This document shows, piece by piece, positions 1 through 20,345 of a DNA stretch of 64,000 nucleotides. The translations under genes and the position numbers were made by a program. Source of the stretch: Ranitomeya imitator (Eukaryota); NCBI RefSeq assembly GCF_032444005.1, contig NC_091283.1, positions 270,878,001 to 270,942,000 on the forward strand. Direction: 5' to 3'. Under the pieces are notes generated by a model. That model was not told where the DNA came from. It saw nothing but the letters and a program-made list of their open reading frames with translations, and searched no databases. How positions within the stretch are numbered: position 1 is the first letter of the stretch; the number at the start of each line of letters is the position of its first letter.

Positions 1-1
1 T

Positions 2-597
2 GAGACGATCTCAAAAATTATCCCAAAAAAACCTTCTATCTCATTTCGTCGTGGGAAAAATTTGCGTGATCGCCTCGTACGAAGTCATTATGAGAGTACA
101 TCTCCCCATACATTCCTTGATGATGTCCCGGTTAGAAGAGGTTGTAGGCCCTGTGGGCACTGTGTCGCCTGTAGTAATATTGAACGTAGTAATTCTTTTG
201 TCGATTCCTCGGGATGTAAGAAGTATGATATCGTTAAGTCAATTACATGCGAATCGAGTAATGTCATCTACTATGCCACGTGTCCGTGCTCCCTGATTTA
301 TGTTGGCCTTACCACACGCCAGCTTAAGGTGAGAGTCAGGGAGCACGTGCGTGGCATTGAGGCGGCAAGAGAACAAGACGACATGTTGCTCTTAAACACA
401 ATTCCGAAACACTAAGTTACATCACGGCTGTAATAGTAGGGGATTTCGAGTAAAGGGCATTGACTATCGACCTGGGCATCCGAGGGGGGAATATTTCTCA
501 GCGCCTCTCTCAGTTGGAAACTCGATGGATCTGGACACTTGGTACTGTCCATCCCCGTGGCCTTAATGAGTATTTTAACTTCTCGTCCTTTCTGTGA
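2..597 (+). pseudogene. Disrupted GIY-YIG endonuclease domain of the Penelope-like element
   Basis: The GIY-YIG motif appears as VIY...YVG, with REH and ETRWI..L.T..P.GLN. There is a stop at 413-415 and frameshifts near 415 and 490. Confidence 0.85.
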
Positions 598-1635
598 TTC
601 CCCTTCTGCTGCACATGTGTGCGGGACACTCTTTGTTTTATTATTGTTTTTAACCATTTTTTGTATTTTACTAACATTTATATGTATATTTATATTTATA
701 TTTAGGTCTTGTTGTGCGTTTTTTCGTATTGGTGGTGTTACGTGCTGATGTGGACAATTGGATGGGTCTACTCCCTGGTTTGGGGTTTTCTACACCGGTG
801 GCAGTGTGTTCTGAAGATACTTGGACTCTATCATCAACAGCTTTTATGCAGCAGAATGGATATCATGGACTGATTGATACGATATTTGATTTCACAAGTT
901 GCCACTGCATATATATATATGATTTATTATCCTGTTATTATTGCAGTTACTATGTGTTCTACATATTTGATCTGTACAGTATCATTGTATATAGTTGTAT
1001 TTGTATAATTTGTATATTTGGTATTTGTGTGTTTTAGTTATACACATTTCCATGGTATTTGTTTTCAGTATTGTTTTTGTTTTTTGTCTGTAGGGTTTAT
1101 TTATACTTTTTATATGCCCCTTTTGTTTTCATACCCATTTGTTTTTGTTCTTTTCTGTTTCTTATCCCTTTTTTTCTATTTGCCGTCTTATGCTGCTTTT
1201 CGTGCACTTTCCCTATTCCAAGATGGAGGTTGTGTACATTGCATGCGTTTGCGCATGCGCGGCTATGTTTCTGTGTGTCTCGTCGCTATGGTTGCGCCGC
1301 AACGCGTCTGTTGCTGGGGGACACAGGGCCCTGTGTCCGCCCGGTGTACGGCGCTGTGCGGCGTACCCGCTGGCGTCGGGGTAGCGGTAACATCGCCGCT
1401 TGATTTTGCTCCACTTGTCTATATGGGGAATTGGTTGCCTAGTGACTACTTGTCACTTCCGGTTGCGGCGGTTTCCAGTTTCCGGTTTTCGTCTCTATTC
1501 TGTTTAATAGGGTATAGGTTACTCAGTAACCATTTGTCACTTCCGGTTACGGCGTTGTGCTCATTTCCGGTCCTGACGGCTTTGCACTTCCGGTTTAGCA
1601 GCTATATAATCGCACATCTGACCCCTGAGTATATG

Positions 1636-1676
1636 TCCCCCTGAGGAAGGTTTATCGCCGAAACGTGCGTTGGGGA
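1636..1676 (+). ncRNA. Minimal type I hammerhead ribozyme (PLE type)
   Basis: tcccc-CTGAGGA-a-gg-tttatcg-cc-GAAA-cgtgcg-TT-gggga. Stem I is tcccc/gggga, the core is CUGANGA...GAAA, and stem III is near-palindromic. Confidence 0.75.
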
Positions 1677-2361
1677 GGGCGCACGGACCCTGGATCTGGT
1701 CCACTCTTTTGCCCTGTTCTTTAGGTAAGGTATAATCATGATACTTATAATATTGGGCTCTTTTTAGTATCCATGTACGTTGATGGTGGTACTTATATTT
1801 TATAACATAGTGGTAATGATTTCTCAATCCACCTGGTATTGGTTATGAGTGGACTTTGACCCCGGCTCCGTGCACTCTGTTTATGCTCTTTTCAGTGGTG
1901 TCCCTGTGCACCCTGTGGTGCTGAGCCACATCTGTTCTGTTGTTTATATGTATACATTTTGTCTTTTATACAATAAAGTTGATATTTATATAGTTACATT
2001 GGGTTTCTGATCGTTTTTGGGGTCTTTGTTGATCCATATTTTGGTTGGTCTGTAGTTGGTAGCGATTTACCCTTTAATATATATATATAGATATTAGTCC
2101 CTATGGCATGGCATTTTCATTAATATCTTTCTGATTATATTATTTTGCTATGCATATTCTTGTCGTGTGCTTGTTTTCTCATAGGTGGTAACCGCAGCTC
2201 TCGATGTGACTGGAGCATAGGTGGTACCCGCAGCTCTTGGTTCGGTGTCTGCGGAGCACACAGTGCATTAATGGGATCTCAACCGTGTGAGTGCAGCTCT
2301 GGATGTGACTAGAGTGGAAGACGATACAACAGACAATATACAGGTAAATTATGACTCGTAC

Positions 2362-2436
2362 CTGTGACGGGGGCGGTCTCTTCCCCCTCAGAGCCCCCGC
2401 TGACCCCTTCGCCAGATTCGGGTACTTCATTCTCAT
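2362..2436 (-). CDS. Linker exon of Tc1-HTH paralog B (DENEVPESGEGVSGGSEGEETAPVT)
   Basis: Acceptor atctttatatctag|at, donor acag|gtacga. 75 nt, phase 1-1. It mirrors the 66-nt exon at 18421-18486. Confidence 0.65.
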
Positions 2437-2472
2437 CTAGATATAAAGATAAATGTGGGATGAAGCAGCAAG

Positions 2473-3346
2473 ACAGCTCTGTATGTGACCGACGGCAGAA
2501 GTGTGAGCACAGCTCTGTATGTGACCGACAGAAGAAGTGTGAGCGCAGCTCTGTATGTGACCGACGGCAGAAGTGTGAGCGCAGCTGTGTATGTGACCGA
2601 CGGCAGAAGTGTGAGCGCAGCTGTGTATGTGACCGACGGCAGAAGTGTGAGCGCAGCTCTGTATGTGACCGACGGCAGAAGTGTGAGCACAGCTCTGTAT
2701 GTGACCGACGGCAGAAGTGTGAGCACAGCTCTGTATGTGACCGACGGCAGAAGTGTGAGCGCAGCTCTGTATGTGACCGACGGCAGAAGTGTGAGCGCAG
2801 CTGTGTATGTGACCGACGGCAGAAGTGTGAGCGCAGCTGTGTATGTGACCGACGGCAGAAGTGTGAGCGCAGCTGTGTATGTGACCGACGGCAGAAGTGT
2901 GAGCACAGCTCTGTATGTGACCGACGGCAGAAGTGTGAGCATAGCTCTGTATGTGACCGACGGCAGAAGTGTGAGCGCAGCTGTGTATGTGACCGACGGC
3001 AGAAGTGTGAGCGTAGCTGTGTATGTGACCGACGGCAGAAGTGTGAGCGCAGCTGTGTATGCGACCGACGGCAGAAGTGTGAGCGCAGCTGTGTATGTGA
3101 CCGACGGCAGAAGTGTGAGCGCAGCTGTGTATGTGACCGACGGCAGAAGTGTGAGCGCAGCTGTGTATGTGACCGACGGCAGAAATGTGAGCGCAGCTGT
3201 GTATGTGACCGACGGCAGAAGTGTGAGCGCAGCTGTGTATGTGACCGACGGCAGAAGTGTGAGCGCAGCTGTGTATGTGACCGACGGCAGAAGTGCGAGC
3301 ACAGCTGGGTATGAGACCGACGGCAGAAGTGCGAGCGCAGCTCTGT
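2473..3346. repeat. 36-bp minisatellite (gcagctgtgtatgtgaccgacggcagaagtgtgagc), about 24 copies, intronic
   Basis: Visible period; lies between the exons at 2362-2436 and 3427-3649. Confidence 0.95.
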
Positions 3347-3426
3347 GTGTGGACTTTTCCTATCCGCTGTAGGGCTAGTCAGTGATGTGTGTGGCGGGGC
3401 AGCGGCCATCATCCAGTCCTCGTTAC

Positions 3427-3649
3427 CTCTTCTCCGGAGCGTGCAGAGGATGCTGGCGATCTTGGTTGGCCGCCCGCTGCGGGGACGGGAGGAGACGGTG
3501 TTGAAGGTCTTCCACTTGTAGATGATCTGCCGGACGGTGGAGCGGTGAAGCTCGCACACTTTACTGATGGTCTTGTAACCCTTCCCGGCCTCGTGGGCCG
3601 CCACCACCTTCCTCCGCACCTCGTCAGAGATCTCCTTGGACCGGGGCAT
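3427..3649 (-). CDS. Tc1 transposase-derived HTH exon, paralog B
   Basis: MPRSKEISDEVRRKVVAAHEAGKGYKTISKVCELHRSTVRQIIYKWKTFNTVSSRPRSGRPTKIASILCTLRRR, then phase-1 donor agag|gtaacg. An acceptor (ctcccctccag|gaaccATG) lies just upstream. Confidence 0.75.
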
Positions 3650-3744
3650 GGTTCCTGGAGGGGAGCGCTGGAAGGGGGAACAGCTGCACCCAGGAAATCA
3701 GAGCAACTGTCCTCACAACAATTCCATGACCTGAGGAGACAACG

Positions 3745-3935
3745 GTACGAAAAACTAAGTACACCCTCACTGCTTCCATAGGAATGAAGAGTCAGTGTGA
3801 GCACTGCTATAAAAGCAGAAGTTCTGGCAGACTGCTGGCCTGGAGCATTCAGGCGACATCAGCACTGACCTCAGAGAAGCCATCTATAGATAATCTGGAG
3901 TCCATCAGTCCGCAGTGAGAAACATTCAATACGGC
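3745..3935 (+). mobile_element. Decayed Tc1 5' fragment
   Basis: A Tc1-like terminal motif (aaaactaagtacaccctc) is followed by degenerate DISTDLREA...VHQSAVRNIQY coding remnants. Confidence 0.5.
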
Positions 3936-3939
3936 TGGT

Positions 3940-4825
3940 GCGCGGGGCCACAAGAGCGCGGAGCAGGAAGGTGCTCAGGGCCACAAGAGCGCGGAGCAGG
4001 AAGGTGCGCGGGGCCACGAGAGCGAAGCAGGAAGGTGCATGCGGGCCCACAAGAGAGCCGAGCAGGAAGGTGCATGCGGGCCCACAAGAGAGCCGAGCAG
4101 GAAAGTGCACGGGCCCACAAGAGAGCAGAGCAGAAAGGTGTGCAGGGCCACAAGCACAGAGCAGGAAAGTGCACATGTGGACCGCAAGAGAGCGGAGCAG
4201 GAAGGTGCACACAGGGACACGAGAACGGAGTAGGAAGGTGTGCAGGGCCACAAGAGTGGAGCAGGAAGGTGCACATGTGGACCGCAAGAGAGCGGAGCAG
4301 GAAGGTGCACACAGGGACACGAGAGCGGAGCAGGAAGGTGCACGCGGGGACCACAAGAGAGCGGAGCAGGAAGGTGCACACGGGGACACGAGAGCGGAGC
4401 AGGAAGGTGCACGCGGGTACCACAAGAGAGCGGAGCAGGAAGGTGCACACGGGGACCACAAGAGAGCGGAGCAGGAAGGTGCACGCGGGGACCACAAGAG
4501 AGCGGAGCAGGAAGGTGCACGCGGGGACCACAAGAGAGCGGAGCAGGAAGGTGCACACGGGGACACGAGAGCGGAGCAGGAAGGTGAACGCGGGGACCAC
4601 AAGAGAGCGGAGCAGGAAGGTGCAAGCGAGGACCACAAGAGAGCGGAGCAGGAAGGTGCACGCGGGGACCACAAGAGAGCGGAGCAGGAAGGTGCAGGCG
4701 AGGACCAAAATAGAGCGGAGCAGGAAGGTGTGCAGGGGCCACAAGAGAGTGGAGCAGGAAATTGCGCGGGGCCAGCAGAGAGCAGAGCAGGAATTTGCGC
4801 GGGGCCAGCAGAGAGCGGCGCAGTA
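3940..4825. repeat. About 36-bp minisatellite (gagcggagcaggaaggtgcacgcggggaccacaaga)
   Basis: Visible tandem units with 33-37 bp variants. Confidence 0.9.
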
Positions 4826-4955
4826 AGCGCACGGAAAAATAACATAACCAAGAGCAGCTCCCGAGAGCGAGGGGTGGACAGATGTCCAGAGAAGCATCAT
4901 GGCAGATATCACTGTCACAGAAGGCTCCACAGCTCCAGGTCAGGGGTGTACTCAC

Positions 4956-5012
4956 TTCTCGCTCCGCAGCCTCTGCACATAATCCCCCGGAGTGACCCGT
5001 CCTGCTCTTCAT
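4956..5012 (-). other. Candidate upstream exon of Tc1-HTH paralog B (57 nt)
   Basis: Acceptor ttatctccag|atg, donor gagaa|gtgagt. Read phase 1-1 it gives DEEQDGSLRGIMCRGCGAR, in frame with the HTH exon; it could instead be UTR. Confidence 0.35.
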
Positions 5013-5099
5013 CTGGAGATAACTACAACGACCAGAGGTTTATTCCATCCCGATACCTCAGAGGGTGTACTCACTTCTCATAACTGTACAATGCTCAGT

Positions 5100-5305
5100 G
5101 GTCACACGACCTGTGTGTATAGATATATATATGTGTATGATCACAGGACCTGTGTGTATAGATATGTGTATGATCACAGGACCTGTGTGTATAGATATGT
5201 GTATGATCACATGACCTGTGTGTATAGATATATATATATGTGTATGATCACATGACCCGTGTGTATAGATATATATATATATATATATATATGTATGATC
5301 ACATT
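5100..5305. repeat. Short array of about 32-bp units plus (AT)n
   Basis: cacaggacctgtgtgtatagatatgtgtatgat repeated about 5 times. Confidence 0.8.
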
Positions 5306-5339
5306 ACAGAGAATTACACACGCAGCTGTCACTACCACA

Positions 5340-5600
5340 CACAATAACCCTCCTCACAGACCTGTAGAGCGGAGCCGCTCCGGAGGCGGCGGCGGCAGCT
5401 GCATGTGTGGAGACGAGTCCGGGGCTTAATCTGTTCCACAGGAGGCTGCTGGGACATGTAGTGCTCGCTGCGAGCCCACAGTAGCCGCCGCTCACTGCCA
5501 AGGTAAGAAATGACCTGCGGTGACGTCACGGTCACATGACCCTTGTGTGGGCGGGGCTATTACTATTGAATGGAGCGAAGGCTGCCCACGTGATGCAGAG
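5340..5600. promoter_or_regulatory. CpG-rich putative promoter
   Basis: CRE gtgacgtcac (about 5520-5529), E-box gtcacatgac, GC box gggcggggc. Candidate minus donor ctacag|gtctgt near 5361 and plus donor caag|gtaaga at 5503. Confidence 0.5.
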
Positions 5601-5604
5601 AAGC

Positions 5605-8600
5605 ATCTGTGTACAGGGCGGGGCTGTGTACGGACACCAGAGCGGGGGCGGGGCTGTGTACGGACCCAAGAGCGGGGGCGGGGCTGTGTACGGACACGAG
5701 AGCGGGGGGGCGGGGCTGTGTTCTTACACCAGAGCGGGGGCGAGGCTGTGTACGGACACCAGAGCGGGGGCGCGGCTGTGTACGGACACCAGAGCGGGGG
5801 CGCGGCTGTGTACGGACACCAGAGCGGGGGCGGGGCAGTGTACGGACACCAGAGCGGGGGCGGGGCAATGTACGGACACCAGAGCGGGGGCGGGGCTGTG
5901 TACGGACACCAGAGCGGGGGCGGAGCAGTGTACGGACACCAGAGCGGGGGCGGAGCAGTGTACGGACACCAGAGCGGGGGCGGGGCAATGTACGGACACC
6001 AGAGCGGGGGGCGGGGCTGTGTACGGACACCAGAGCGGGGGGCGGGGCTGTGTACAGACACCAGAGCGGGGGCGGGGCAGTGTACGGACACCAGAGCGGG
6101 GGGCGGGGCTGTGTACGGACACCAGAGAGGGGGCGGGGCTGTGTACTTACACCAGAGCGGGGGCCGGGGCTGTGTACGGGCACCAGAGAGGGGGGGGCGA
6201 AGCTGTATACTTACACCAGAGCAGGGGGCGGAGCTGTGTACGGGCACCAGAGCGGGGGGGCGGGGCTGTGTACTTGCACCAGAGCAGGGGGCGGGGCTGT
6301 GTACGGACACCAGAGTGGGGGGCGAGCCTGTGTACGGACACCAGAGTGGGGGGCGGGCCTGTGTACGGACACCAGAGTGGGGGGCGGGCCTGTGTACGGG
6401 CACCAGAGTGGGGGGCGGGGCTGTTTACGGGCACCAGAGCGGGGGCGGGGCTGTGTACTTACACCAGAGCACGGACACCAGAGCGGGGGGCGGGGCTGTG
6501 TACGGACACCAGAGCGGGGGCGGGCTGTGTACGGGCACCAGAGCGGGGGGCGGGGCTGTGTACGGGCACCAGAGAGGAGGCGGGGCTGTGTACGGACACC
6601 AGAGCGGGGGGCGGGGCTGTGTACGGACACCAGAGCGGGGGGCGGGGCTGTGTACAGTCACCAGAGTGGGGGGCGGGCCTGTGTACGGACACCAGAGCGG
6701 GGGGCGGGGTTGTGTACGGACACCAGAGCGGGGGGCGGGACTGTGTACGGGCACCAGAGTGGGGGGCGGGGCTGTTTACGGGCACCAGAGCGGGGGCGGG
6801 GCTGTGTACTTACACCAGAACACGGACACCAGAGCGGGGGGCGGGGCTGTGTACAGACACCAGAGCGGGGGCGGGCTGTGTATGGGCACCAGAGCGGGGG
6901 GCGGGGCTGTGTACGGGCACCAGAGCGGGGGGCGGGGCTGTGTACGGGCACCAGAGAGGAGGCGGGGCTGTGTACGGACACCAGAGCGGGGGGCGGGGCT
7001 GTGTACGGACACCAGAGCGGGGGGCGGGGCTGTGTACGGGCACCAGAGCGGGGGGCGGTGCAGTGTACGGGCACCAGAGCGGGGGCGGGGCAGTGTACGG
7101 ACACCAGAGCGGGGGCGGGGCTGTGTACGGACACCAGAGCGGGGGGCGGGGCTGTGTACGGACACCAGAGCGGGGGGCGGGGCTGTGTACGGGCACCAGA
7201 GAGGAGGTGGGGCTGTGTACGGACACCAGAGCGGGGGGCAGGGCTGTGTTCTTAAACCGAAGCAGGGGGCGGGGCTGTGTATGGACACCAGAGCGGGGGC
7301 GGGGACGTGTACGGACACCAGAGGGGGGGCGTGGCTGTGTACGGACACCAGAGCGGGGCAGTGTACGGACACCAGAGCGGGGGCGGGGCAGTGTACGGAC
7401 ACCAGAACGGGGCTGTGTACGGGCACCAGAGTGGGGGGCGGGGCTGTGTACAGACACCAGAGCGGGGGGCGGGGATGTGTACGGACACCAGAGCGGGGGG
7501 CGGGGCTGTGTACGGACACCAGAGCAGGGGGCGGGGCTGTGTACGGGCACCAGAGCGGGGGGCGGGGCTGTGTACGGGCCCCAGAGCGGGGGGGGGGGGG
7601 GGCCAAAGCTGTGTACTTACACCAGAGCGGGGGGGCGGGGCTGTGTACGGGCACCAGAGCGAGGGCAGGGCTGTGTACGGGCACCAGAGCGGGGGGCGGG
7701 GCTGTGTACGGGCACCAGAGCGGGGGCGGGGCTGTGTACGGGCACCAGAGCGGGGGGCGGGGCTGTGTACGGACACCAGAGCGGGGGGCGGGGCTGTGTA
7801 CGGACACCAGAGCGGGGCTGTGTATGGACACCAGAGCGGGGGCGGGGCTGTGTACTTACACCAGAGCAGGGGGCGTGGCTGTGTACAGGCACCAGAGCGG
7901 GGGCGGGGCTGTGTACGGACACCAGAGCGGGGGCGCGGCTGTGTACAGACACCAGAGCGGGGGGCGTGGCTGTGTACAGACACCAGAGCGGGGGCGGGGC
8001 AGTGTACGGACACCAGAGCGGGGCTGTGTACTTACACCAGAGTGGGGGCGGGTCTGTGTACTTACACCAGAGCGGGGGGCGTGGCTGTGTACAGACACCA
8101 GAGCGGGGGGCGTGGCTGTGTAAGGACACCAGAGCGAGGGGCGGGGCAGTGTACGGACACCAGAGCGGGAGCGGGGCAGTGTACGGACACCAGAGCGGGG
8201 GCGGGGCAGTGAACGGACACCAGAGCGGGGGCGGGGCAGTGTACGGACACCAGAGCGGGGGCGGGGCAGTGTACAGACACCAGAGCGGGGGCAGGGCAGT
8301 GTAGACACCAGAGCGAGGGCGGGGTAGTGTACGGACACCAGAGCGGGGGCGGGGCAGTGTAGACACCAGAGCGAGGGCGGGGTAGTGTACGGACACCAGA
8401 GCGGGGGCGGGGCAGTGTACAAACACCAGAGCGGGGGGCGGGGCTGTGTACGGACACCAGAGCGGGGGGCGGGGCAGTGTACAAACACCAGAGCAGGGGG
8501 CGTGGCTGTGTACAGGCACCAGAGCAGGGGCGGGGCTGTGTACGGACACCAGAGCGGGGGGCGGGGCTGTGTACGGGCACTAGAGCGGGGGGCGGGGCTG

Positions 8601-9280
8601 TGTACAGACACCAGAGCGGGGGGGGGGGGGGCTGTGTACTTACACCAGAGCGGGGGCGGGGCTGTGTACGGACACCAGAGCGGGGGCGCGGCTGTGTACG
8701 GACACCAGAGCGGGGGGCGTGGCTGTGTACGGACACCAGAGCGGGGGCGGGGCAGTGTACGGACACCAGAGCGGGGCTGTGTACTTACACCAGAGTGGGG
8801 GCGGGTCTGTGTACTTACACCAGAGCGGGGGCACAGCTGTGTAAGGACACCAGAGCGAGGGGCGGGGCAGTGTACGGACACCAGAGCGGGAGCGGGGCAG
8901 TGTACGGACACCAGAGCGGGGGCGGGGCAGTGAACGGACACCAGAGCGGGGGCGGGGCAGTGTACGGACACCACAGCGGGGGCGGGGCAGTGTACAGACA
9001 CCAGAGCGGGGGCGGGGCAGTGTAGACACCAGAGCGGGGGCGGGGCAGTGTAGACACCAGAGCGAGGGCGGGGTAGTGTACGGACACCAGAGCGGGGGCG
9101 GGACAGTGTAGACACCAGAGCGAGGGCGGGGTAGTGTACGGACACCAGAGCGGGGGCGGGGCAGTGTACAAACACCACAGGGGAGCTGTGTACTTACACT
9201 AGAGCGGGGGCGGGGCTGCCTACTTACACCAGAGCAGGGGGCAGGGCTGTGTACGGACACCAGAGCGGGGGCGGGGCTCT
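5605..9280. repeat. 30-31-bp G-rich minisatellite (gtgtacggacaccagagcgggggcggggct), about 120 copies
   Basis: Visible period; most units contain GGGGCGGGG. Confidence 0.95.
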
Positions 9281-9360
9281 TGTGTAAGCCTCAACCTAAT
9301 GGGCAGAGGGGCCGGGGAAGAAACCACATCATGTATATGGAGGGGGGGGGGGGGGTAGAA

Positions 9361-12300
9361 TTGTACTGTGGGAACATCATACTGTGTGAGGGGGATGGTA
9401 CTGAGGGGACATCATACCGTGTTTGAGGGGGATTGTACTGAGGGGACATCATACCGTGTGTGAGGGGGATTGTACTGAGGGGACATCATACCGTGTGTGA
9501 GGAGGATTGTACTGAGGGGACATCATACCGTGTGTGAGGAGGATTGTACTGAGGGGACATCATACCATATGTGAGGGGGATTGTACTGAGGGGACATCAC
9601 ACCGTGTGTGAGGGATTGTACTGATGGGACATCATACCGTGTGTGAGGGGGATGGTACTGAGGGGACATCACACCGTGTGTGAGGTATTGTACTGAGGGG
9701 ACATCATACCGTGTGTGAGGGGGATTGTACTGAGGGGACATCATACCGTGTGTGAGGGGGATTGTACTGAGGGGACATCATACCGTGTGTGAGGGGGATT
9801 GTACTGAGGGGACATCATACCGTGTGTGAGGGGGATTGTACTGAGGGGACATCATACCGTGTGTGAGGGGGATTGTACTGAGGGGACATCATACCGTGTG
9901 TGAGGAGGATTGTACTGAGGGGACATCATACCGTGTGTGAAGGGGATTGTACTGAGGGGACATCATACCGTGTGTGAGGGGGATGGTACTGAGGGGACAT
10001 CATACCGTGTGTGAGGGGGATGGTACTGAGGGGACATCATACCGTGTGTGAGGGGGATGGTACTGAGGGGACATCATACCGTGTGTGGGGGGATTGTACT
10101 GAGGGGACATCATACCGTGTGTGAGGGGGATTGTACTGAGGGGACATCATACCGTGTGTGAGGGATTGTACTGAGGGGACATCATACCGTGTGTGAGGGG
10201 GATTGTACTGAGGGGACATCATACCGTGTGTGAGGGGGATTGTACTGAGGGGACATCATACCGTGTGTGAGGGGGATTGTACTGAGGGGACATCATACCG
10301 TGTGTGAGGGGGATTGTACTGAGGGGACATCATACCGTGTGTGAGGGGGATTGTACTGAGGGGACATCATACCGTGTGTGAGGGGGATTGTACTGAGGGG
10401 ACATCATACCGTGTGTGAGGGGGATTGTACTGAGGGGACATCATACCGTGTGTGAGGGGGATGGTACTGAGGGGACATCATACCGTGTGTGAAGGGGATT
10501 GTACTGAGGGGACATCATACCGTGAGGATTGTACTGAGGGGACATCATACCATGTGTGAGGGGGATTGTACTGAGGGGACATCATACCGTGTGTGAGGGG
10601 GATGGTACTGAGGGGACATCATACCGTATGTGAGGGATTGTACTGAGGGGACATCATACCGTATGTGAGGGATTGTACTGAGGGGACATCATACCGTGTG
10701 TGAGGGGGATTGTACTGAGGGGACATCATACCGTGTGTGAGGATTGTACTGAGGGGACATCATACCGTGTGTGAGGGGGATTGTACTGAGGGGACATCAT
10801 ACCGTGTGTGAGGGGGATTGTACTGAGGGGACATCATACCGTGTGTGAGGGGGATGGTACTGAGGGGACATCATACCGTGTGTGAGGGATTGTACTGAGG
10901 GGATATCATACCGTGTGTGAGGGGGATTGTACTGAGGGGACATCATACCGTGTGTGAGGGGGATGGTACTGAGGGGACATCATACCGTATGTGAGGGATT
11001 GTACTGAGGGGACATCATACCGTATGTGAGGGATTGTACTGAGGGGACATCATACCGTGTGTGAGGGGGATTGTACTGAGGGGACATCATACCGTGTGTG
11101 AGGATTGTACTGAGGGGACATCATACCGTGTGTGAGGGGGATTGTACTGAGGGGACATCATACCGTGTGTGAGGGGGATTGTACTGAGGGGACATCATAC
11201 CGTGTGTGAGGGGGATGGTACTGAGGGGACATCATACCGTGTGTGAGGGATTGTACTGAGGGGATATCATACCGTGTGTGAGGGGGATTGTACTGAGGGG
11301 ACATCATACCGTGTGTGAGGAGGATTGTACTGAGGGGACATCATACCGTGTGTGAGGGGGATTGTACTGAGGGGACATCATACCGTGTGTGAGGGGGATT
11401 GTACTGAGGGGACATCATACCGTGTGTGAGGAGGATTGTACTGAGGGGACATCATACCGTGTGTGAGGGGGATTGTACTGAGGGGACATCATACCGTGTG
11501 TGAGGGGGATTGTACTGAGGGGACATCATACCGTGTGTGAGGGGGATTGTACTGAGGGGACATGATACCGTGTGTGAGGGATTGTACTGAGGGGACATCA
11601 TACCGTGTGTGAGGGGGATTGTACTGAGGGGACATCATACCGTGTGTGAGGGGGATTGTACGGAGGGGACATCATACCGTGCGTGAGGGGGATTGTACTG
11701 AGGGGACATCATACCGTGCGTGAGGAGGATTGTACTGAGGGGACATCATACCGTGTGTGAGGGGGATTGTACTGAGGGGACATCATACCGTGTGTGAGGG
11801 GGATTGTACTGAGGGGACATCATACCGTGTGTGAGGGGGATGGTACTGAGGGGACATCATACCGTGTGTGAGGGATTGTACTGAGGGGACATCATACCGT
11901 GTGTGAGGGGGATTGTACTGAGGGGACATCATACCGTGCGTGAGGAGGATTGTACTGAGGGGACATCATACCGTGCGTGAGGGGGATTGTACTGAGGGGA
12001 CATCATACCGTGCGTGAGGGGGATTGTACTGAGGGGACATCATACCGTGTGTGAGGAGGATTGTACTGAGGGGACATCATACCGTGTGTGAGGGGGATTG
12101 TACTGAGGGGACATCATACCGTGTGTGAGGGGGATTGTACTGAGGGGACATCATACCGTGTGTGAGGGGGATGGTACTGAGGGGACATCATACCGTGTGT
12201 GAGGGATTGTACTGAGGGGACATCATACCGTGTGTGAGGGGGATTGTACTGAGGGAACATCATACCGTGTGTGAGGAGGATTGTACTGAGGGGACATCGT

Positions 12301-14752
12301 ATCGTGTGTGAGGGGGATTGTACTGAGGGGACATCATACCGTGTGTGAGGGGGATTGTACTGAGGGGACATCATACCGTGTGTGAGGGGGATTGTACTGA
12401 GGGGACATCATACCGTGTGTGAGGGGGATTGTACTGAGGGGACATCATACCGTGTGTGAGGGGGATTGTACTGAGGGGACATCATACCGTGTGTGAGGGG
12501 GATGGTACTGAGGGGACATCATACCGTATGTGAGGGATTGTACTGAGGGGACATCATACCGTATGTGAGGGATTGTACTGAGGGGACATCATACCGTGTG
12601 TGAGGGGGATTGTACTGAGGGGACATCATACCGTGTGTGAGGGGGATTGTACTGAGGGGACATCATACTGTGTGTGAGGGATTGTACTGAGGGGACATCA
12701 TACTGGGTGTGGGGGGGATTGTACTATGGGGACTGTTGTGAATTCTGCTCTTGGGCTTCCTCCGCTGGTTGTTGATGGTAATGCAGTTATTCCTGAGCAG
12801 CAGTCTTGGACAGGTGTTTCTGCTAATTGCAATTCTGACTGGGGTATTTAGCTGTGCAGGACTCATTGGTCCTTGCCAGTAGTCAATGTTCCTTTGGAAG
12901 TGTTGGTCCTCTGCCTGGCCCTTCTGCTTGCTGCCATCTCAGCAAAGTTAAGTGTTTGCTTCTTTTTTTTAGACACACTGCTGTGTGTTTATTTTCTGTG
13001 CTGATCTTGTTTCTATTTTGTTCCTGCTAGACTGTGCCTGATGTTTTTCTCAGTCTAGTTGGATTCGCTGGAGTCGCAGATATACCCTCCACATCTTTAG
13101 TTAGGTGGTGGAGTTTTTGTATTTTTCTGCTGTGGATATTTTGTAGTGTTTTATGCTGACCGCATAGTATCCTGTACTATCCTTTCCTATCTAGGTAGAA
13201 GTGGCCTCCTTTGCTTATCCCTGTTTTCTGTCTGCGTGTGTCTCTTCCTCTCCTACTCACAGTCATTATTTGTAGGGGGCTACCTATCCTTTGGGGGTCT
13301 ACTCTGAGGCAAGAGAGTTTTCCTATTTCCATCTTTAGGGATATTTAGTTTTCCGGCTGTGTCGAGGTGTCTAGGTCTGGTTAGGCACACCCCACGGCTA
13401 CTTTTAGTTGCGGTGATAGGATCAGGGTTTGCGGTCAGTAAAGTTACCACTGCTCCAGCGAAGGTCATTTCATGCTGCTCCAAGGCCACCTGATCATAAC
13501 AGGGGACATCATACTGTGTGTGATGGGGATTGTACTGAGGGGACATCATACTGTGTGTGGGGGGATTGTACTGAGGGGACATCATACTGTGTGTGAGGAG
13601 GATTGTACTGAGGAGGATTGTACAGAGGGGACATCATACTGTGTGTGAGGGGAATTGTACTAACGGGACATCATACTGTGTGTGAGGGGGATTGTACTGA
13701 GGAGACATCATACCGTGTGTGGGGGGATTGTATTGTGAGGACATCATACTGTGTGTGAGGGGGATTGTACTGAGGAGACATCATACCGTGTGTGGGGGGA
13801 TTGTATTGTGGGGACATCATACCGTGTGTGAGGGGGATTGTACTGAGGGGACCTCATACCGTGTGTGAGGGGGATTGTACTGAGGGGACATCATACCGTG
13901 TGTGAGGGGGATTGTACTGAGGGGACATCATACCGTGTGTGAGGGGGATTGTACTGAGGGGACATCATACCGTGTGTGAGGGGGATTGTACTGAGGGGAC
14001 ATCATACCGTGTGTGAGGGGGATTGTACTGAGGGGACATCATACTGTGTGTGAGGGGGATTGTACTGAGGAGACATCATACCGTGTGTGGGGGGATTGTA
14101 TTGTGAGGACATCATACTGTGTGTGAGGGGGATTGTACTGAGGAGACATCATACCGTGTGTGGGGGGATTGTATTGTGGGGACATCATACCGTGTGTGAG
14201 GGGGATTGTACTGAGGGGACCTCATACCGTGTGTGAGGGGGATTGTACTGAGGGGACATCATACCGTGTGTGAGGGGGATTGTACTGAGGGGACATCATA
14301 CCGTGTGTGAGGGGGATTGTACCGAGGGGACATCATACCGTGTGTGAGGGGGATTGTACCGAGGGGACATCATACCGTGTGTGAGGGGGATTGTACCGAG
14401 GGGACATCATACCGTGTGTGAGGGGGATTGTACCGAGGGGACATCATACCGTGTGTGAGGGGGATTGTACCGAGGGGACATCATACCGTGTGTGAGGGGG
14501 ATTGTACTGAGGGGACATCATACCGTGTGTGAGGGGGATTGTACTGAGGGGACATCATACCGTGTGTGAGGGGGATTGTACTGAGGGGACATCATACTGT
14601 GTGTGAGGGGGATTGTACTGTGGGGGACATAGATACTGTGTGTGAGGGGGATTGCACTGTGGGGACATCATACTGTGTGTGAGGGAGATTGCACTGTGGG
14701 GACATCATACCGTGTGAGGGGGATTGCACTGTGGGGGACATAGATACTTTGT
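9361..14752. repeat. 37-bp minisatellite (gtactgaggggacatcataccgtgtgtgagggggatt), interrupted by a solo LTR
   Basis: Visible period. Confidence 0.95.
12734..13501. mobile_element. Solo LTR (768 bp)
   Basis: Termini TGTTGTGA...TCATAACA (TG..CA, 7/8 inverted match), flanked by duplicated GGGGAC at 12728-12733 and 13502-13507. Confidence 0.8.
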
Positions 14753-16018: not shown

Positions 16019-16899
16019 GTGCAAGAACATTATGCAGTGAAGGCCATGAAATGGAAATCATAGTGGGTGAGAACACTAAGGGGCTTCAGTAGGGTGTAAT
16101 AAGTGCCCAGCACCCGTCTCTCTCAGCGTCTTTAGAAGTTGCTAGGTCTGGTCTGTGACTGCGCCCATGTGCTGTGATAGCACTTTTGGGGTCCTGTGAT
16201 TTCTGACTCCCCAGCTCAGGAACATTATTACTCTGCACGGACACTGGTATCATGTGCGGGGGCACTGGTCATAGCGGTAATATTAGTAACAGACCCCAGA
16301 TGGGAAACATGACAGAGCCGGCGTGGGCCTGTGTGCTGTCAAATCCCCAGGCTGAAATTCAGCCCCAGTCCAGCCCCGTCTGGAAGTATATCATCGACCA
16401 CATTGGGTACAGCGGTTGTGTGGGGGTCCGCTCAGTAACTCCCTGTTACCCAGGAAGAGCTGGTCCCGTGAGGAGTCACTGCACCCACTCAGAATTCTCA
16501 CGGCAGTGCATACACTGCACAGATGCCATCACAGATGGCGCCCCCTACAGAACAAACATATGCTCAAGTGCAGGGTTTTGTGCATTTTTATAACTTTCTA
16601 CAAGATAAGGAATAAAAAAATTCATATGATAATTTTTAAAAAATCCCTCCTGTAGCCTCCGCCCTCGGTTAGTGTTCCCATTAGAGTTACTTCCTGCAAA
16701 AAAAAAAAAAAAAAAAGGATAAATAGAAAATAAGATCCTGGATGGAGAAGCGAAGATGAAAGCTGCGGCCAGGAGAGGAGTCGAGGGCTGCAGCCAGGAG
16801 CAAAGAGTTGCGACGAGGAGGGAAAAGCTGTGGCCAAGACCCGAGAGCTGTGTTCAGGAGAGAAGAACTGCGGCCAGGATAGGAGCAGATGGCCGTGTT

Positions 16900-17400
16900 C
16901 TGGAGAGATGATCTGCGGGCAGGAGAGGAGCCGAGGACTGTGTTCGTGAGAGAAGAGCTGCGGCCAGGAGAGGAGCCGAGGACTGTGTTCAGGAGAGAAG
17001 AGCTGCGGCCAGGAGAGGAGCCAAGGGCTGTGTTCAGGAGAGAAGAGCTTCAGCCAGGAGAGGAGCCAAGGGCTGTGTTCAGGAGAGAAGAGCTTCAGCC
17101 AGGAGAGGAGCTGAGGACTGTGTTCAGGAGAGAAGAGCTTCAGCCAGGAGAGGAGCCGAGGACTGTGTTCAGGAGAGAAGAGCTTCAGCCAGGAGAGGAG
17201 CTGAGGACTGTGTTCAGGAGAGAAGAGCTGCGGCCAGGAGAGGAGCCGAGGACTGTGTTCAGGAGAGAAGAGCTTCTGCCAGGAGAGGAGCCGAGGACTG
17301 TGTTCAGGAGAGAAGAGCTTCAGCCAGGAGAGGAGCCGAGGACTGTGTTAAGAAGAGAAGAGCTGCGGCCAGGAGAGGAGGTGAGGGCTGTGGCCAGAAG
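16900..17400. repeat. 45-bp purine-rich minisatellite
   Basis: Unit translates as FRREELRPGEEPRTV (15 codons); about 11 copies. Confidence 0.9.
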
Positions 17401-17584: not shown

Positions 17585-17943
17585 TCAGCAGCCATGTTTT
17601 CTTTTCCGGTGTGCTCTCAGGCCGGCGGCGGTCTGGAAGGCTCTCCCGCACTCCTCGCACTGGTGCAGCGTCTTGTCCAGGTGCTGCGCCTGGTGACTTT
17701 CCAGATCGGTTTCTGTGGTGCAGCAGGTTCCGCAGATCTCGCAGCAGAGCATTACCTCCATGTGACGCTCTGCAGGTGGCGGGGCTGGTCCCAGCTCGCG
17801 GTTACAGTTCAGCTTTTCTTTCCGCCTTATTCTTTTTGTCGTCTTCCTTGTGACCGTGGAAACATCAGGGAGCGCAAGAGTCATGGAGGCTTTGTCCTCC
17901 CCCGCCGCTGCGACGCCGCCGCAGTCTGCACCATGGTCCGTAC
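17585..17943 (-). CDS. Terminal exon with two C2H2 zinc fingers
   Basis: ORF 17585-17950 contains CEICGTCCTTETDLESHQAQH and HQCEECGRAFQTAAGLRAHRKRKH; the acceptor ends at 17944. Confidence 0.8.
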
Positions 17944-19986
17944 CTGACAAACAAGGACCGCGACATCATCAGTATCCTGCAGCTCGAGGGGCGACAGGAG
18001 CAGCCATGGCAGACGCACAATTAAAGGGGTTGTCCCACAAACAAAACTACATTTTAATCAGCAAATCCTCAAAAATTCAGCAGTTCATCAATTGGATGTT
18101 TTGAGCATTTTTTTTAAACAGTCTTTGCTGTATCCCATGTATCCCGCTGGCCATGTAGAGATGCTGCAGGGTCGTGTACACCGCTTCTGGCGAGGGGGAG
18201 TCATAAGTGACCACAGTATTATAGGTGACACGGGCGGGGCACCCTCCAGCTGATCGCCAGGAGCGGAGTACGCGACCATGAGCTGCAGCATCTGCCGGGG
18301 CACAGCGCACAGGGAAGGTCAGCAGCAGCTTCATCGCCACAAAAAACACCAGTGAAGGAACTTCTTAGATTACCATCATCTATTGAATGGTCCCACTAAC
18401 ATTCTGCACAGATGACTTACCTGAGACTCGCGAGTCCTCGCTCTTCGCACTGACGCTCGCCTCTTCTATTTTTATGCTCTCATTTTCTAGATTAAAAGAA
18501 AAAAGGACACAAATAATAGAACATCACAGATGAAACTCCAGGAGGGTAGCAGAGTATTAATGCTACACAAACACTCTCTACACCCGAGCGCTCTCTGCTC
18601 TCGTACCAGACACCTGCGTGCTCTCCGCTCTCATACCTGAGACCAGCGTGCTCTCCGCTTTCGTACCAGACACCCGAGCGCTCTCTGCTCTCGTACTAGA
18701 CACCCGCGTGTTCTCTGCTCTCGTACTAGACACCCACGTGTTCTCCGCTCTCGTACCTGACACCCGTGTGCTCTCCTATCTCGTACCTGACACCAGCGTG
18801 CTCTCCGCTCTCGTACCAGACACCCGAGCGCTCTCTGCTCTCCTACTAGACACCCGAGCGCTCTCTGCTCTCGTACCTGACACCCGTGTGCTCTCTGCTC
18901 TCGTACCTGACACCCGTGTGCTCTCTGCTCTCGTACCTGACACCCGTGTGCTCTCCGCTCTCATACCTGACACCCGAGCGCTCTCTGCTCTCGTACCTGA
19001 CACCCGAGCGCTCTCTGCTCTCGTACCTGACACCCGTGTGCTCTCTGCTCTCGTACCTGACACCCGTGTGCTCTCTGCTCTCGTACCTGACACCCGTGTG
19101 CTCTCCGCTCTCATACCTGACACCCGAGCGCTCTCTGCTCTCGTACCTGACACCCGTGTGCTCTCTGCTCTCGTACCTGACACCCGAGCGCTCTCTGCTC
19201 TCGTACCTGACACTCGTGTGCTCTCTGCTCTCGTACCTGACAACTGCGTGCTCTCCGCTCTCATACCTGAGACCTGCGTGCTCTCCGCTCTCATACCTGA
19301 CACCCGTGTGCTCTCCTATCTCGTACCTGACACCAGCGTGCTCTCCGCTCTCGTACCAGACACCCGAGCGCTCTCTGCTCTCGTACCTGACACCCGAGCG
19401 CTCTCTGCTCTCGTACTAGACACCCGCGTGTTCTCTGCTCTCGTACTAGACACCCACGTGTTCTCCGCTCTCGTACCTGACACCAGCGTGCTCTCCGCTC
19501 TCGTACCTGACACCAGCGTGCTCTCCGCTCTCGTACCTGACACCAGCGTGCTCTCCGCTCTCGTACCAGACACCCGAGCGCTCTCTGCTCTCGTACTAGA
19601 CACCTGCGTGTTCTCCGCTCTCGTACCCGACACCTGTGTGCTCTCCTTCCCGTTGACTCTGACACCTTCTGTTGTAATTTTCTGTCCCTGACAACCTGTG
19701 GGTAATAGGACAGTGACATGAGTAGCCAATCAGCGGCCGTCCCTGGAGCAGCGGCAGTCTCCTTACCTCTCCGGAGGTGGGGCAGGACGGTGGCCAACTT
19801 GATGGGGCGCCCGCTCCGGGGAAGTGTGGAGATGGTGTTGAAGGCCTTCCACTTGTAGATGATCTTCCTCACAGTGGAGTGGTGCAGCTCACACATCTTA
19901 CTGATGGTTTTGTAGCCTTTCCCAGCTTCGTGAGCCTCCACCACCCTCCTCCGCACATCCTCCGAGAAGTCCTTGGACCGGGGCAT
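17585..19986 (-). CDS. Tc1-HTH + 2xC2H2 zinc-finger fusion gene (paralog A), predicted 214 aa; exons 19986-19767, 18486-18421, 17943-17585
   Basis: All GT-AG junctions are phase 1 (agag|gtaagg; atctag|aa; tcag|gtaagt; tttgtcag|gt). 220+66+359=645 nt is open to the stop. Fingers are CEICG...HQAQH and CEECG...HRKRKH. Confidence 0.7.
18590..19645. repeat. 30-bp minisatellite (ctcgtacctgacacccgtgtgctctctgct), intronic
   Basis: Visible period, about 35 copies. Confidence 0.95.
19767..19986 (-). CDS. Tc1 transposase-derived HTH exon, paralog A
   Basis: MPRSKDFSEDVRRRVVEAHEAGKGYKTISKMCELHHSTVRKIIYKWKAFNTISTLPRSGRPIKLATVLPHLRR, then a donor. There is no TIR or DDE domain around it. Confidence 0.78.
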
Positions 19987-20049
19987 GATTCCCGGCTGCA
20001 CCGAGAAGAGCAGCACCGGCGGCGTCACCGCCGCTACACTGAGTCCACG

Positions 20050-20345
20050 GCTCGAAGACTCAGAGCGGCGACTAGACGATCAAAGCTCAGCAGTCATGTG
20101 ACGTGCGCATAACGCGCTGCGAACCCAACTGTGAAGCTAAGCAGTCACATGACCGGCGTACACAGGCTCAGAAAAGATTCACCAATCAGTGTCGTTTACG
20201 TCACCGGACTGTCAGCCAATAGACGGGAACCATAACCAGAGCGCTAGTTGGTGTGTCTCACACACTGCAGCAATGTCCTCAGCTCGGCGGCCATCTTATT
20301 GTAGCCGCGCCACAGACTGGGCTTTGTCTGTTGCTATGGAAGCAA
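20050..20345. promoter_or_regulatory. Putative promoter of paralog A
   Basis: CpG-rich, with E-box/CRE-like tcatgtgacg, gtcacatgac and ttacgtcac, two CCAAT boxes, YY1-like gcggccatctt and X-box-like gttgctatggaa. Confidence 0.55.

What the first reader, a model, noticed from the sequence alone, without database searches (positions are those of the whole stretch)
2362..3649. Second Tc1-HTH paralog with the same exon architecture and an excess of synonymous change
Seen: over the first 65 codons the two HTH exons differ at 16 codons synonymously and 15 non-synonymously (50/65 aa identical) with no indels or stops. Both end ctc cgg aga..g|gtaa in phase 1, both have ggaa(c/t)cATG before the start, and both are followed by a short acidic phase 1-1 exon. 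Inference: the gene duplicated after capture and both copies are under purifying selection. The shared non-transposase tail argues against two independent TE insertions.
Basis: partly seen in the sequence, partly recalled or inferred. Interest (0 to 1): 0.7.

Follow-up and report, generated by a model that had tools for sequence, protein, structure and literature searches.

The report
Second frog transposase-head zinc-finger gene
This is a real, spliced and expressed poison-frog gene, the tandem twin of a neighbouring gene, whose first coding exon is the DNA-binding head of an old Tc1 "jumping gene" joined to two zinc fingers. The two twins keep different heads, while their zinc-finger tails are kept alike within each species.

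Summary
Copy B (ATG 3649, minus strand) and copy A (ATG 19986) differ over 65 codons at 16 synonymous and 15 non-synonymous codons. dN/dS is 0.22, and the bootstrap interval excludes 1.

Both heads are Sleeping-Beauty-type PAI helix-turn-helix domains (Pfam HTH_SB, E about 1e-19).

RNA-derived contigs from four studies splice 3427 to 2436. They then run on into a paralogous zinc-finger exon that lies beyond the window start. The window is Ranitomeya imitator.

Intact B orthologues exist in R. variabilis, Dendrobates tinctorius and Phyllobates terribilis, each beside an A orthologue. Anomaloglossus has a B-like copy.

All frog HTH plus zinc-finger genes form one clade apart from free Tc1 transposases. 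This fits one capture followed by duplication.

New here:
- Heads group by paralogue, but tails group by species, which indicates gene conversion of the 3' exon.
- A, not B, changed at DNA-contacting helix-3 positions (R36H, Q41K).
- A has one extra coding exon.
- No R. imitator protein with B's head turned up in three protein searches.

The kind of gene (host-transposase fusion) is known. The scan's follow-up on copy A (s1-288114) had already noted this family.

The parts
5519..5600 (-). Promoter of copy B. It holds a CRE-like TGACGTCA, the 10-mer GTCACATGAC (5531-5540), a GC box and a CACGTG E-box, just upstream of the transcript start at 5518.
   Evidence: Read directly. GTCACATGAC occurs only 3 times in the window; the other two are in A's promoter (20093-20102, 20144-20153), against 0.22 expected. 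Promoter function is inferred.
5359..5518 (-). Non-coding first exon of B. Its donor is at 5359 or 5362.
   Evidence: Contig pieces cover 5359/5362-5518..5535 in all four runs. Joints run 5359->3727 and 5362->5022. The X16 contig runs on at 5518 into letters that I recognise as the SMART template-switch oligo (own knowledge), which marks a cap-proximal cDNA end.
4954..5024 (-). Alternative non-coding exon of B.
   Evidence: Joints 5362->5022 and 4954->3728 in runs X1, X3 and X9.
3427..3728 (-). First coding exon of B. It comprises 79 nt of 5' UTR and then the CDS 3649-3427: 74 codons plus 1 nt, phase 1. It encodes the PAI-type HTH, the RPRSGRPTK motif and a basic end.
   Evidence: Translation. 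Pfam HTH_SB E = 6.2e-20. PDB 2m8e, the Sleeping Beauty PAI subdomain, E = 7e-7. Exon limits come from contigs in four runs.
2437..3426 (-). Intron 1 of B (GT..AG, 990 nt). It holds a 36-bp x 24.4 tandem array at 2474-3351.
   Evidence: The joint 2436<->3427 skips 990 nt in four runs. The array is from TRF. The whole intron is open in the exon frame, giving a 446-aa ORF at 2309-3649, but it is spliced out.
2362..2436 (-). Acidic exon of B (75 nt, phase 1-1; DENEVPESGEGVSGGSEGEETAPVT).
   Evidence: Contig pieces cover 2357-2436; their last 5 nt, gtacg, are shared by the intron start and the next exon. It is homologous to A's exon 18486-18421 and to the (S/D)(E/D)NE...RV(S/P)G exon of other frogs.
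1..2361 (-). Part of intron 2 of B. The zinc-finger exon lies beyond the window start.
   Evidence: No finger exon is found by tblastn in 1-2361. Contigs leave the window at 2357-2362 and continue with letters that match the start of A's exon 3.
19767..19986 (-). HTH coding exon of paralogue A, used for comparison.
   Evidence: It is identical to R. imitator RefSeq proteins P0013 and P0014.
19627..19695 (-). Extra coding exon of A (GCQGQKITTEGVRVNGKESTQVS). B has no counterpart.
   Evidence: An exact substring of P0013 and P0014.
18421..18486 (-). Acidic exon of A.
17585..17943 (-). Terminal exon of A, with an NLS-like basic stretch, two C2H2 fingers and the stop codon.
   Evidence: Pfam zf-C2H2 E = 2e-7. 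An exact substring of P0013 and P0014.

Best explanation
Copy B is a functional protein-coding gene of Ranitomeya imitator. It is the downstream member of a head-to-tail pair (A, then B, both on the minus strand) of a frog gene family.

Origin. In this family the first coding exon is the PAI helix-turn-helix of a Tc1/Sleeping-Beauty-type transposase, together with the GRP minor-groove motif. A donor site inside the old transposase reading frame ends the exon at about residue 74. The exon is spliced to host exons: an acidic linker, a basic NLS-like stretch and two C2H2 fingers. The capture happened once, before Hyloidea and Myobatrachidae split. The whole gene, promoter motif included, later duplicated in tandem, at the latest in the ancestor of Phyllobates, Dendrobates and Ranitomeya.

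Evolution since the duplication. The two heads have evolved apart under purifying selection. B kept the ancestral recognition helix. A changed it at DNA-contacting positions. The zinc-finger exon has been repeatedly homogenised between A and B by gene conversion.

Likely function (inferred). The protein is about 218 aa. It has no RED subdomain and no DDE catalytic domain, so it cannot transpose. It most likely acts as a small nuclear, sequence-specific DNA-binding factor that reads DNA with the HTH head and the two fingers. A and B probably address partly different sites through their heads and share whatever the tail does.

Shown: anatomy, splicing, expression, homology, selection on the head, tree topology, and the conflict between head and tail trees.
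Inferred: DNA binding, nuclear location, different targets, and regulator or transposon-repressor function.
For: Sequence and domains. Translation and Pfam give HTH_SB at E = 6e-20 for B and 6e-19 for A. PDB 2m8e matches at E = 7e-7 over residues 1-52. The AlphaFold model of the B orthologue P0003 has three helices (9-20, 25-32, 36-50) at pLDDT about 90, a disordered stretch at 73-161, and two beta-beta-alpha fingers at pLDDT about 80. Its best Foldseek matches, all weaker than E 0.001 (best E 6e-3), are DNA-bound tandem C2H2 fingers.

Expression and splicing. The joint 2436<->3427 is seen in contigs of four runs from four studies. Introns and flanks have zero depth. There are three 5'-UTR joints. 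The contigs continue into an exon-3-like sequence.

Selection. dN/dS is 0.18-0.31, and the interval excludes 1.

Orthologues. P0003 (R. variabilis) differs from B by 1 aa in the head. P0004, P0005 and P0006 are further B orthologues, and P0007 (Anomaloglossus) is B-like. A orthologues are P0015, P0009 and P0008. The R. variabilis genes have adjacent LOC numbers. In D. tinctorius, A lies at 289-2676 and B at 10001-12486 on the same strand, with separate ends.

Single capture. All 18 fusion heads form one clade, with support 97 and 98/94.

Polarised changes. Of the 19 head differences, 11 are derived in A and 7 in B. A's R36H and Q41K fall on residues listed as DNA contacts of SB helix 3 (PMC11754664).

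Heads against tails. The heads differ at 16-21 of 72 residues between paralogues and at 1-8 between orthologues. The tails differ at 0/115, 2/118 and 6/117 between paralogues within a species, and at 10-27 between species. The AU test rejects paralogue monophyly of the tails (p = 1.4e-5 and 3e-64).

Shared promoter motif.
Against: - B's zinc-finger exon lies outside the window. Only its first 30 bases were seen, as a loose end, so intactness of the R. imitator B reading frame downstream of 2362 is inferred from orthologues.
- No R. imitator protein with B's head is in the protein collection at 110-750 aa.
- Orthologue DNA could not be fetched. Lineage-specific dN/dS for B was therefore not computed, and the pairwise value mixes both branches.
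- The head is only 73 columns. The AU test cannot reject alternative placements of A (p = 0.2-0.4), so the date of the duplication is loose.
- No effector domain is recognisable, and no binding or functional data exist.
- The runs are labelled 'RNA?' by guess. Their RNA origin is inferred from the spliced forms and from the exon-only coverage.
Confidence: 0.82

Rival explanations
1. The A/B split is much older than dendrobatids, perhaps early in Hyloidea. On this view two head types have been kept for roughly 70-100 My or more. Gene conversion has erased the age signal everywhere except at selected head positions. Other hyloids have lost the A type, or it has not been annotated in them. This rival concerns the timing only; it does not question that B is a gene.
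For: - Rhinoderma P0001 has two heads in one gene model. Head 1 shares D6, H36 and K41 (and A48) with the dendrobatid A type only.
- The two Rhinoderma heads differ at 17 of 63 residues, while the linker exons after each are almost identical. This is the same mosaic as in dendrobatids.
- The AU test does not reject an A+Rhin1 clade (p = 0.27).
- dS of about 0.5 between A and B is large.
Against: - The best trees place A with B and Anomaloglossus in one dendrobatoid clade (97; 80/98).
- Rhin1 is no closer overall to A (15-17 differences) than to B (17-18).
- No A-type head was returned for Bufo, Hyla, Leptodactylus, Eleutherodactylus or Engystomops.
- Three shared states could be convergence at DNA-contact sites.
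Confidence: 0.28
2. B is a transcribed but decaying duplicate in R. imitator. Its low dN/dS would then reflect past constraint or constraint on A only.
For: - No R. imitator protein for B is in the collection.
- Its introns are swollen by a young 36-bp array and by a retroelement fragment.
- Exon 3 was not seen in full.
Against: - The B head is intact and differs by 1 aa from R. variabilis, 3 aa from D. tinctorius and 6 aa from P. terribilis. It changed less than A since the split: 7 derived residues against 11.
- It is correctly spliced in four studies.
- Full-length intact orthologues exist in three or four species.
Confidence: 0.07
3. Two independent Tc1 insertions were exonised separately. 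The excess of synonymous change would then be inherited from selection on active transposases.
For: Tc1 elements are abundant in poison-frog genomes (PMC6278860 abstract). Copies of an active family also differ mostly at synonymous sites.
Against: - The donor sits at the same codon, and the start context, downstream acidic exon and finger exon are shared.
- Both heads sit inside one fusion-gene clade apart from free Tc1.
- The tandem pair is conserved in other species.
- No RED or DDE coding remnant follows either exon.
Confidence: 0.03
4. A and B are alternative first exons of a single gene that share one zinc-finger exon.
For: Tails are identical or nearly identical within a species.
Against: - A's terminal exon (17943-17585) lies upstream of B's transcript start (5518) on the transcribed strand.
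- The start of B's exon 3 differs from A's at 2 of 30 bases.
- The gene ranges in D. tinctorius do not overlap.
- The tails differ at 2 and 6 residues in P. terribilis and R. variabilis.
Confidence: 0.02

Closest known systems
Paralogue A in the same window (R. imitator RefSeq 'zinc finger protein 82 homolog isoform X3' and 'ZKSCAN1-like isoform X1', P0013 and P0014; scan finding s1-288114)
   Same: Same family, same strand, 16 kb upstream. It has an HTH_SB head with the donor at the same codon, an acidic exon, a two-finger tail and the promoter 10-mer GTCACATGAC.
   Different: The heads differ at 19 of 72 residues, including the helix-3 positions 36 and 41. A has an extra coding exon (19695-19627) and an exonised 30-bp array. 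B has a 5' UTR split over two or three exons. The introns cannot be aligned.
Host-transposase fusion genes formed by transposase capture (Cosby et al., bioRxiv 10.1101/2020.05.07.082677), e.g. KRABINER, SETMAR, POGK
   Same: A transposase DNA-binding domain is joined by splicing to host domains. It is immobile and under purifying selection, with dN/dS in the range that paper reports (0.03-0.4).
   Different: Only the PAI half of the bipartite Tc1 DNA-binding domain is kept. It forms the N-terminal first coding exon, whereas in KRABINER the host KRAB domain lies N-terminal to the captured transposase. The host part is two C2H2 fingers, with no KRAB, SCAN or SET domain. The source is a Tc1-proper (Sleeping-Beauty-like) element, not mariner, pogo or Tigger. 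That catalogue covers Xenopus and Nanorana only among frogs, and its Table S3 has no such entry.
Sleeping Beauty transposase PAI subdomain (PDB 2M8E, 6URS)
   Same: A three-helix HTH that aligns 1:1 over residues 1-52. B keeps R36 and K45 of the recognition helix.
   Different: There is no RED subdomain and no DDE catalytic domain. The sequence after the GRP motif has drifted from the Tc1 consensus.
PAX paired domain
   Same: An ancient host DNA-binding domain related to the Tc1/mariner PAI+RED fold.
   Different: PAX keeps both subdomains and is metazoan-wide. Here the Pfam PAX match is negligible (E = 0.048 for A, none for B).
Tc1/Mariner HTH captured by F-box genes (PMC12062965)
   Same: A Tc1/mariner HTH alone is captured into a host gene family and then amplified.
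   Different: The host domain (F-box) and the organisms differ. That paper does not mention frogs or C2H2 fusions.

Membership tests
Host-transposase fusion (domesticated transposase) gene | A domain of clear transposase origin | tested here: met
   Pfam HTH_SB E = 6.2e-20, at 71 bits against a cut-off of 43. PDB 2m8e matches at E = 7e-7. Free Tc1 transposases with a DDE domain (for example P0086) are 59-67% identical over the head.
Host-transposase fusion (domesticated transposase) gene | The transposase part and host domains lie in one spliced transcript | tested here: met
   Contigs from four studies join the HTH exon to the acidic exon and continue into the start of a finger exon. Full-length HTH+2xC2H2 orthologue proteins are P0003, P0004 and P0006. 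The R. imitator exon 3 was seen only for 30 bases.
Host-transposase fusion (domesticated transposase) gene | Purifying selection on the transposase-derived part | tested here: met
   A against B gives dN/dS 0.18-0.31, and the bootstrap interval excludes 1. The head is the most conserved block across 15 frog proteins. A branch-specific test for B was not possible.
Host-transposase fusion (domesticated transposase) gene | Orthologues at a fixed locus across species (immobile) | tested here: met
   A and B are neighbours in R. variabilis (adjacent LOC numbers) and in D. tinctorius (same strand, 7 kb apart). In P. terribilis they lie on the same contig. Flanking-gene synteny was not checked in detail.
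Autonomous Tc1/Sleeping-Beauty-type transposon | Full transposase with a RED subdomain and a DDE catalytic domain | tested here: not met
   The exon ends at residue 74. No further Tc1 coding sequence is found in the window by tblastn. Orthologue proteins carry no PF01498 or PF13358 domain.
Autonomous Tc1/Sleeping-Beauty-type transposon | Terminal inverted repeats with direct repeats flanking the coding sequence | not tested
   No inverted-repeat search was run. A/B homology stops about 10 nt outside the exon.
KRAB zinc-finger proteins | A KRAB box and a long array of TGEKP-linked C2H2 fingers | tested here: not met
   There is no KRAB match in P0003 or in the exons, and only two fingers. The automated RefSeq names (ZKSCAN1-like, ZNF82 homolog) are not borne out by these domain searches.
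PAX / paired-domain proteins | A bipartite PAI+RED paired domain | tested here: not met
   Only the PAI part is present. Pfam PAX gives E = 0.048 for A and nothing for B.

The most novel reading that the evidence does not exclude
A and B are a long-lived two-gene module. Selection keeps two distinct transposase-derived recognition heads: the ancestral R36/Q41 type and a derived H36/K41 type, which also appears in Rhinoderma. Gene conversion keeps the rest of the genes identical. This would be a natural 'swap the head, share the tail' design for two DNA specificities, possibly aimed at Tc1 inverted repeats as a paired repressor.
Probability: 0.3. Interest if true: 0.75.

Novelty: new member of a known kind. 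Interest (0 to 1): 0.55.

Why it matters
Transposase capture is a recognised route to new vertebrate transcription factors. The published catalogue I could read (Cosby et al.) covers only Xenopus and Nanorana among frogs, and none of its entries uses a Tc1-proper PAI head with C2H2 fingers.

This locus adds a conserved neobatrachian family. The paralogue pair is a clean natural experiment in three respects:
- The captured head has duplicated and diverged at DNA-contacting positions.
- The host tail is homogenised by gene conversion.
- The two genes are expressed from their own promoters.

This gives a directly testable case of how a captured DNA-binding module acquires new specificity after domestication.

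It also flags a probable gap in the R. imitator gene set. Three protein searches covering 110-750 aa returned no R. imitator protein with B's head.

Tried and rejected
1. Orthologue codon analysis. The look-up of encoding contigs gave gene ranges but no DNA for R. variabilis, D. tinctorius and P. terribilis, because the files were too large. It had no record for P0007 or P0013. Branch-specific dN/dS and a nucleotide-level gene-conversion test were therefore not possible.

2. B's zinc-finger exon in the window. tblastn found none in 1-2361. The exon lies beyond the window.

3. Dating the duplication from the head tree. With 73 columns the AU tests have no power (p = 0.2-0.4).

4. Foldseek of the full model against PDB. 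It returned only weak tandem-finger matches and no HTH hit. The sequence-level match to 2m8e and the Pfam match carry the HTH assignment.

5. The tandem array as coding sequence. The 446-aa open frame through intron 1 is not used, because all contigs splice it out.

6. The joined spliced protein model of B. It was deliberately not built or searched. Exons were searched by reference one at a time, and an open-frame reference plus the 'region' option was used to set the length window.

7. The large representative-protein search. It was not used, because the word search answered the question.

8. Literature. No paper was found that describes a frog Tc1-HTH/C2H2 gene.

Full report
**What is at the coordinates.** On the minus strand an ATG at 3649 opens a 74-codon exon. 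It ends ctccggagaagag|gtaacg at 3427, with one base of the next codon in the exon (phase 1). A second copy (A) starts at 19986 and ends ctccggagag|gtaagg at 19767. Over the first 65 codons there are 16 synonymous and 15 non-synonymous codon differences, 50 of 65 residues are identical, and there is no indel or stop.

- Nei-Gojobori gives dN 0.115, dS 0.52 and dN/dS 0.22. Over the PAI core (52 codons) it is 0.18, and over 72 codons 0.31.
- The bootstrap intervals exclude 1, and fewer than 0.2% of replicates reach 1.
- Fisher's test on synonymous against non-synonymous sites gives p = 7.6e-5.
- Differences fall 11, 8 and 22 on codon positions 1, 2 and 3.
- GC3 is 85-90%, which if anything makes the estimate conservative.
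- At the DNA level the two loci align only across this exon plus about 10 nt on each side (3414-3658 against 19755-19995, 81%). Introns and flanks are no longer alignable.

**What the exon encodes.** Both peptides match Pfam PF25787 (Sleeping Beauty transposase HTH) end to end, at E = 6e-20 for B and 6e-19 for A, well above the curated cut-off. B aligns 1:1 over residues 1-52 with the solved PAI subdomain of Sleeping Beauty (2m8e, E = 7e-7). After the three-helix domain comes RPRSGRPTK, the GRP-type linker motif of Tc1 transposases. The exon stops after about ten more residues. The RED subdomain and the DDE catalytic domain are absent, and no further Tc1 coding sequence exists in the window.

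**It is a spliced, expressed gene.** Twenty listed runs hold part or all of the exon-1 stretch. I laid the contigs of four runs, from four studies, on 1-5600.

- All four contain one contig that joins 3427 to 2436, skipping 990 nt with GT..AG on the minus strand.
- Depth is zero over the intron and over 1-2057. With assemblies of 60-176 Mb, the data are therefore cDNA rather than genomic DNA, although the runs are labelled RNA only by a guess.
- Upstream, the coding exon begins at 3727/3728. It is joined either directly to a non-coding first exon (5359/5362-5518) or through an alternative exon (4954-5024).
- One contig ends at 5518 and runs on into letters I recognise as a SMART template-switch oligo (own knowledge), which places the transcript start there.
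- Downstream, every contig leaves the window at the donor of the acidic exon (2362). It continues with letters whose reverse complement matches the first 30 bases of A's zinc-finger exon at 28 positions.
- B therefore has its own finger exon beyond the window start. It cannot be A's exon, which lies upstream of B's promoter.
- No finger exon is present in 1-2361.

All searches were made exon by exon or by open-frame reference.

**Species and relatives.** All four coding exons of A are exact substrings of two R. imitator RefSeq proteins, P0013 and P0014. The window is therefore R. imitator. It lies between the HTH exon and the acidic exon and has no counterpart in B.

- A word search with B's head, with the length window set by an open-frame reference, returned intact B-type proteins:
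  - R. variabilis: 218 aa, one residue different in the head.
  - D. tinctorius: 214 aa.
  - P. terribilis: 217 aa, plus an isoform that skips the acidic exon.
- It also returned a B-like protein from Anomaloglossus.
- A-type proteins exist in the same three dendrobatids.
- In R. variabilis the two genes have consecutive LOC numbers.
- In D. tinctorius, A (289-2676) lies 7 kb upstream of B (10001-12486) on the same strand, with separate ends.
- Apparently single HTH+C2H2 genes occur in Bufo (two species), Hyla, Leptodactylus, Eleutherodactylus and Engystomops.
- The Rhinoderma gene model has two heads.
- Pseudophryne has the head plus at least six fingers.
- No R. imitator protein with B's head appears among proteins of 110-750 aa. 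B is probably not annotated as coding in this genome.

**One capture, then duplication.**
- In a 100-row tree of heads, all 18 fusion-gene heads form one clade (SH-aLRT 97). The nearest relatives are free Tc1 transposases from Xenopus and fish.
- In a careful 26-row tree the clade has support 98/94. The A orthologues form a clade (100/98). A, B and Anomaloglossus group together (80/98), with B on very short branches.
- Together with the identical donor position, the homologous acidic exon and the finger tail, this rules out two independent insertions.
- The duplication predates the split of Phyllobates from Dendrobates and Ranitomeya. How much older it is cannot be told from 73 columns (AU p = 0.2-0.4).

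**Which copy changed.** I polarised the 19 head differences with eight outgroup fusion heads and four free Tc1 heads. Eleven are derived in A, seven in B, and one is ambiguous. A's changes include R36H and Q41K. Residues 36, 37, 40, 41, 44 and 45 are the ones reported to contact the major groove in the SB PAI-DNA model (PMC11754664). B keeps the ancestral states. B is thus the conservative copy, and A has probably shifted its DNA specificity (inference).

**Heads and tails have different histories.**
- The heads differ at 16-21 of 72 residues between paralogues and at 1-8 between orthologues.
- The finger exon differs at 0/115 (D. tinctorius), 2/118 (P. terribilis) and 6/117 (R. variabilis) between paralogues of one species, and at 10-27 between species.
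- A tail tree follows the species tree. The AU test rejects paralogue monophyly (p = 1.4e-5 and 3e-64).
- The gene ranges do not overlap, so this is gene conversion (or repeated exchange) of the 3' exon that stops short of the head.

**Mechanism.** The AlphaFold model of the B orthologue has a confident three-helix head, a disordered acidic and basic linker (73-161), and two confident beta-beta-alpha fingers. Its best structural matches, all weaker than E 0.001, are DNA-bound tandem C2H2 fingers. Conservation across 15 frog proteins is concentrated in the head (residues 1-63) and the fingers (165-218).

The most likely function is a small nuclear, sequence-specific DNA-binding factor that cannot transpose. 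Whether it regulates host genes or blocks Tc1 transposase at its inverted repeats is not decided by these data.

Both promoters carry the 10-mer GTCACATGAC. It occurs 3 times in the window, all at these two promoters, against 0.22 expected. This fits duplication of the whole gene.

**Novelty.** Host-transposase fusion genes are a known kind. The catalogue of Cosby et al. covers only Xenopus and Nanorana among frogs and has no Tc1-PAI/C2H2 entry. Full-text searches found no description of this family. The scan's follow-up on copy A (s1-288114) had already called the family a domesticated transposase. My results agree. They add the paralogue, its transcript structure, the conflict between head and tail histories, and the recognition-helix changes.

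Noticed in passing
Proteins P0021, P0022, P0024, P0025, P0027, P0029 and P0110 (ranoid frogs; not in the window): Lithobates, Nanorana, Mantella, Aquarana, Staurois and Rana temporaria share a different architecture. An acidic or repetitive N-terminus is followed by Tc1 PAI+RED (HTH_SB E = 9e-20). All end at the same ...NKWCSWDFT.EE.TAL.QE, and none has a DDE domain. This looks like a second, independent domestication of a Tc1 DNA-binding domain in Ranoidea. It is absent from Cosby Table S3.
   Followed up: partly
P0001 (Rhinoderma darwinii, 345 aa): One gene model holds two HTH heads, each followed by near-identical linker exons. Head 1 shares D6, H36 and K41 with the dendrobatid A type only. 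This is either an ancient A/B split or convergence at DNA-contact positions.
   Followed up: partly
window 2437-3426 (array 2474-3351): Intron 1 of B is exactly 330 codons long and is open in the exon frame through all 24 copies of a 36-bp unit, giving a 446-aa ORF at 2309-3649. The copies are 96% alike. The R. variabilis B gene spans only 1.25 kb, so the array is a recent expansion.
   Followed up: yes
window 18580-19645: A's 30-bp intron array begins at the donor of coding exon 19695-19627. RefSeq isoform X1 (P0014) reads three units as coding (GTRAENTQVS...). This is an exonised minisatellite, in which each unit keeps a G|GTACGA donor.
   Followed up: partly
window 30534-30788 and P0083 (Pseudophryne): The extra fingers of the Pseudophryne fusion protein resemble the finger exon of the neighbouring THAP-KRAB-ZNF gene in this window. 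A's finger exon also hits it by tblastn at E = 7e-6. The host part of the fusion may derive from that neighbouring family.
   Followed up: no
window 62-415 (+): A 117-aa ORF gives a weak GIY-YIG nuclease match (E = 0.007, below the cut-off). It lies inside B's intron 2 and is probably a fragment of a Penelope-like retroelement.
   Followed up: partly
window 5616-14741: Nine kilobases of almost pure minisatellite lie directly upstream of B's promoter: a 30-bp GC-box-like unit x 120, then a 37-bp unit x 146. Similar arrays flank A at 16841-17392 and from 20345 onward.
   Followed up: no
window 3712-3726 (-): The 5' UTR part of B's coding exon holds a 4-codon upstream ORF (ATGGAATTGTTGTGA).
   Followed up: no
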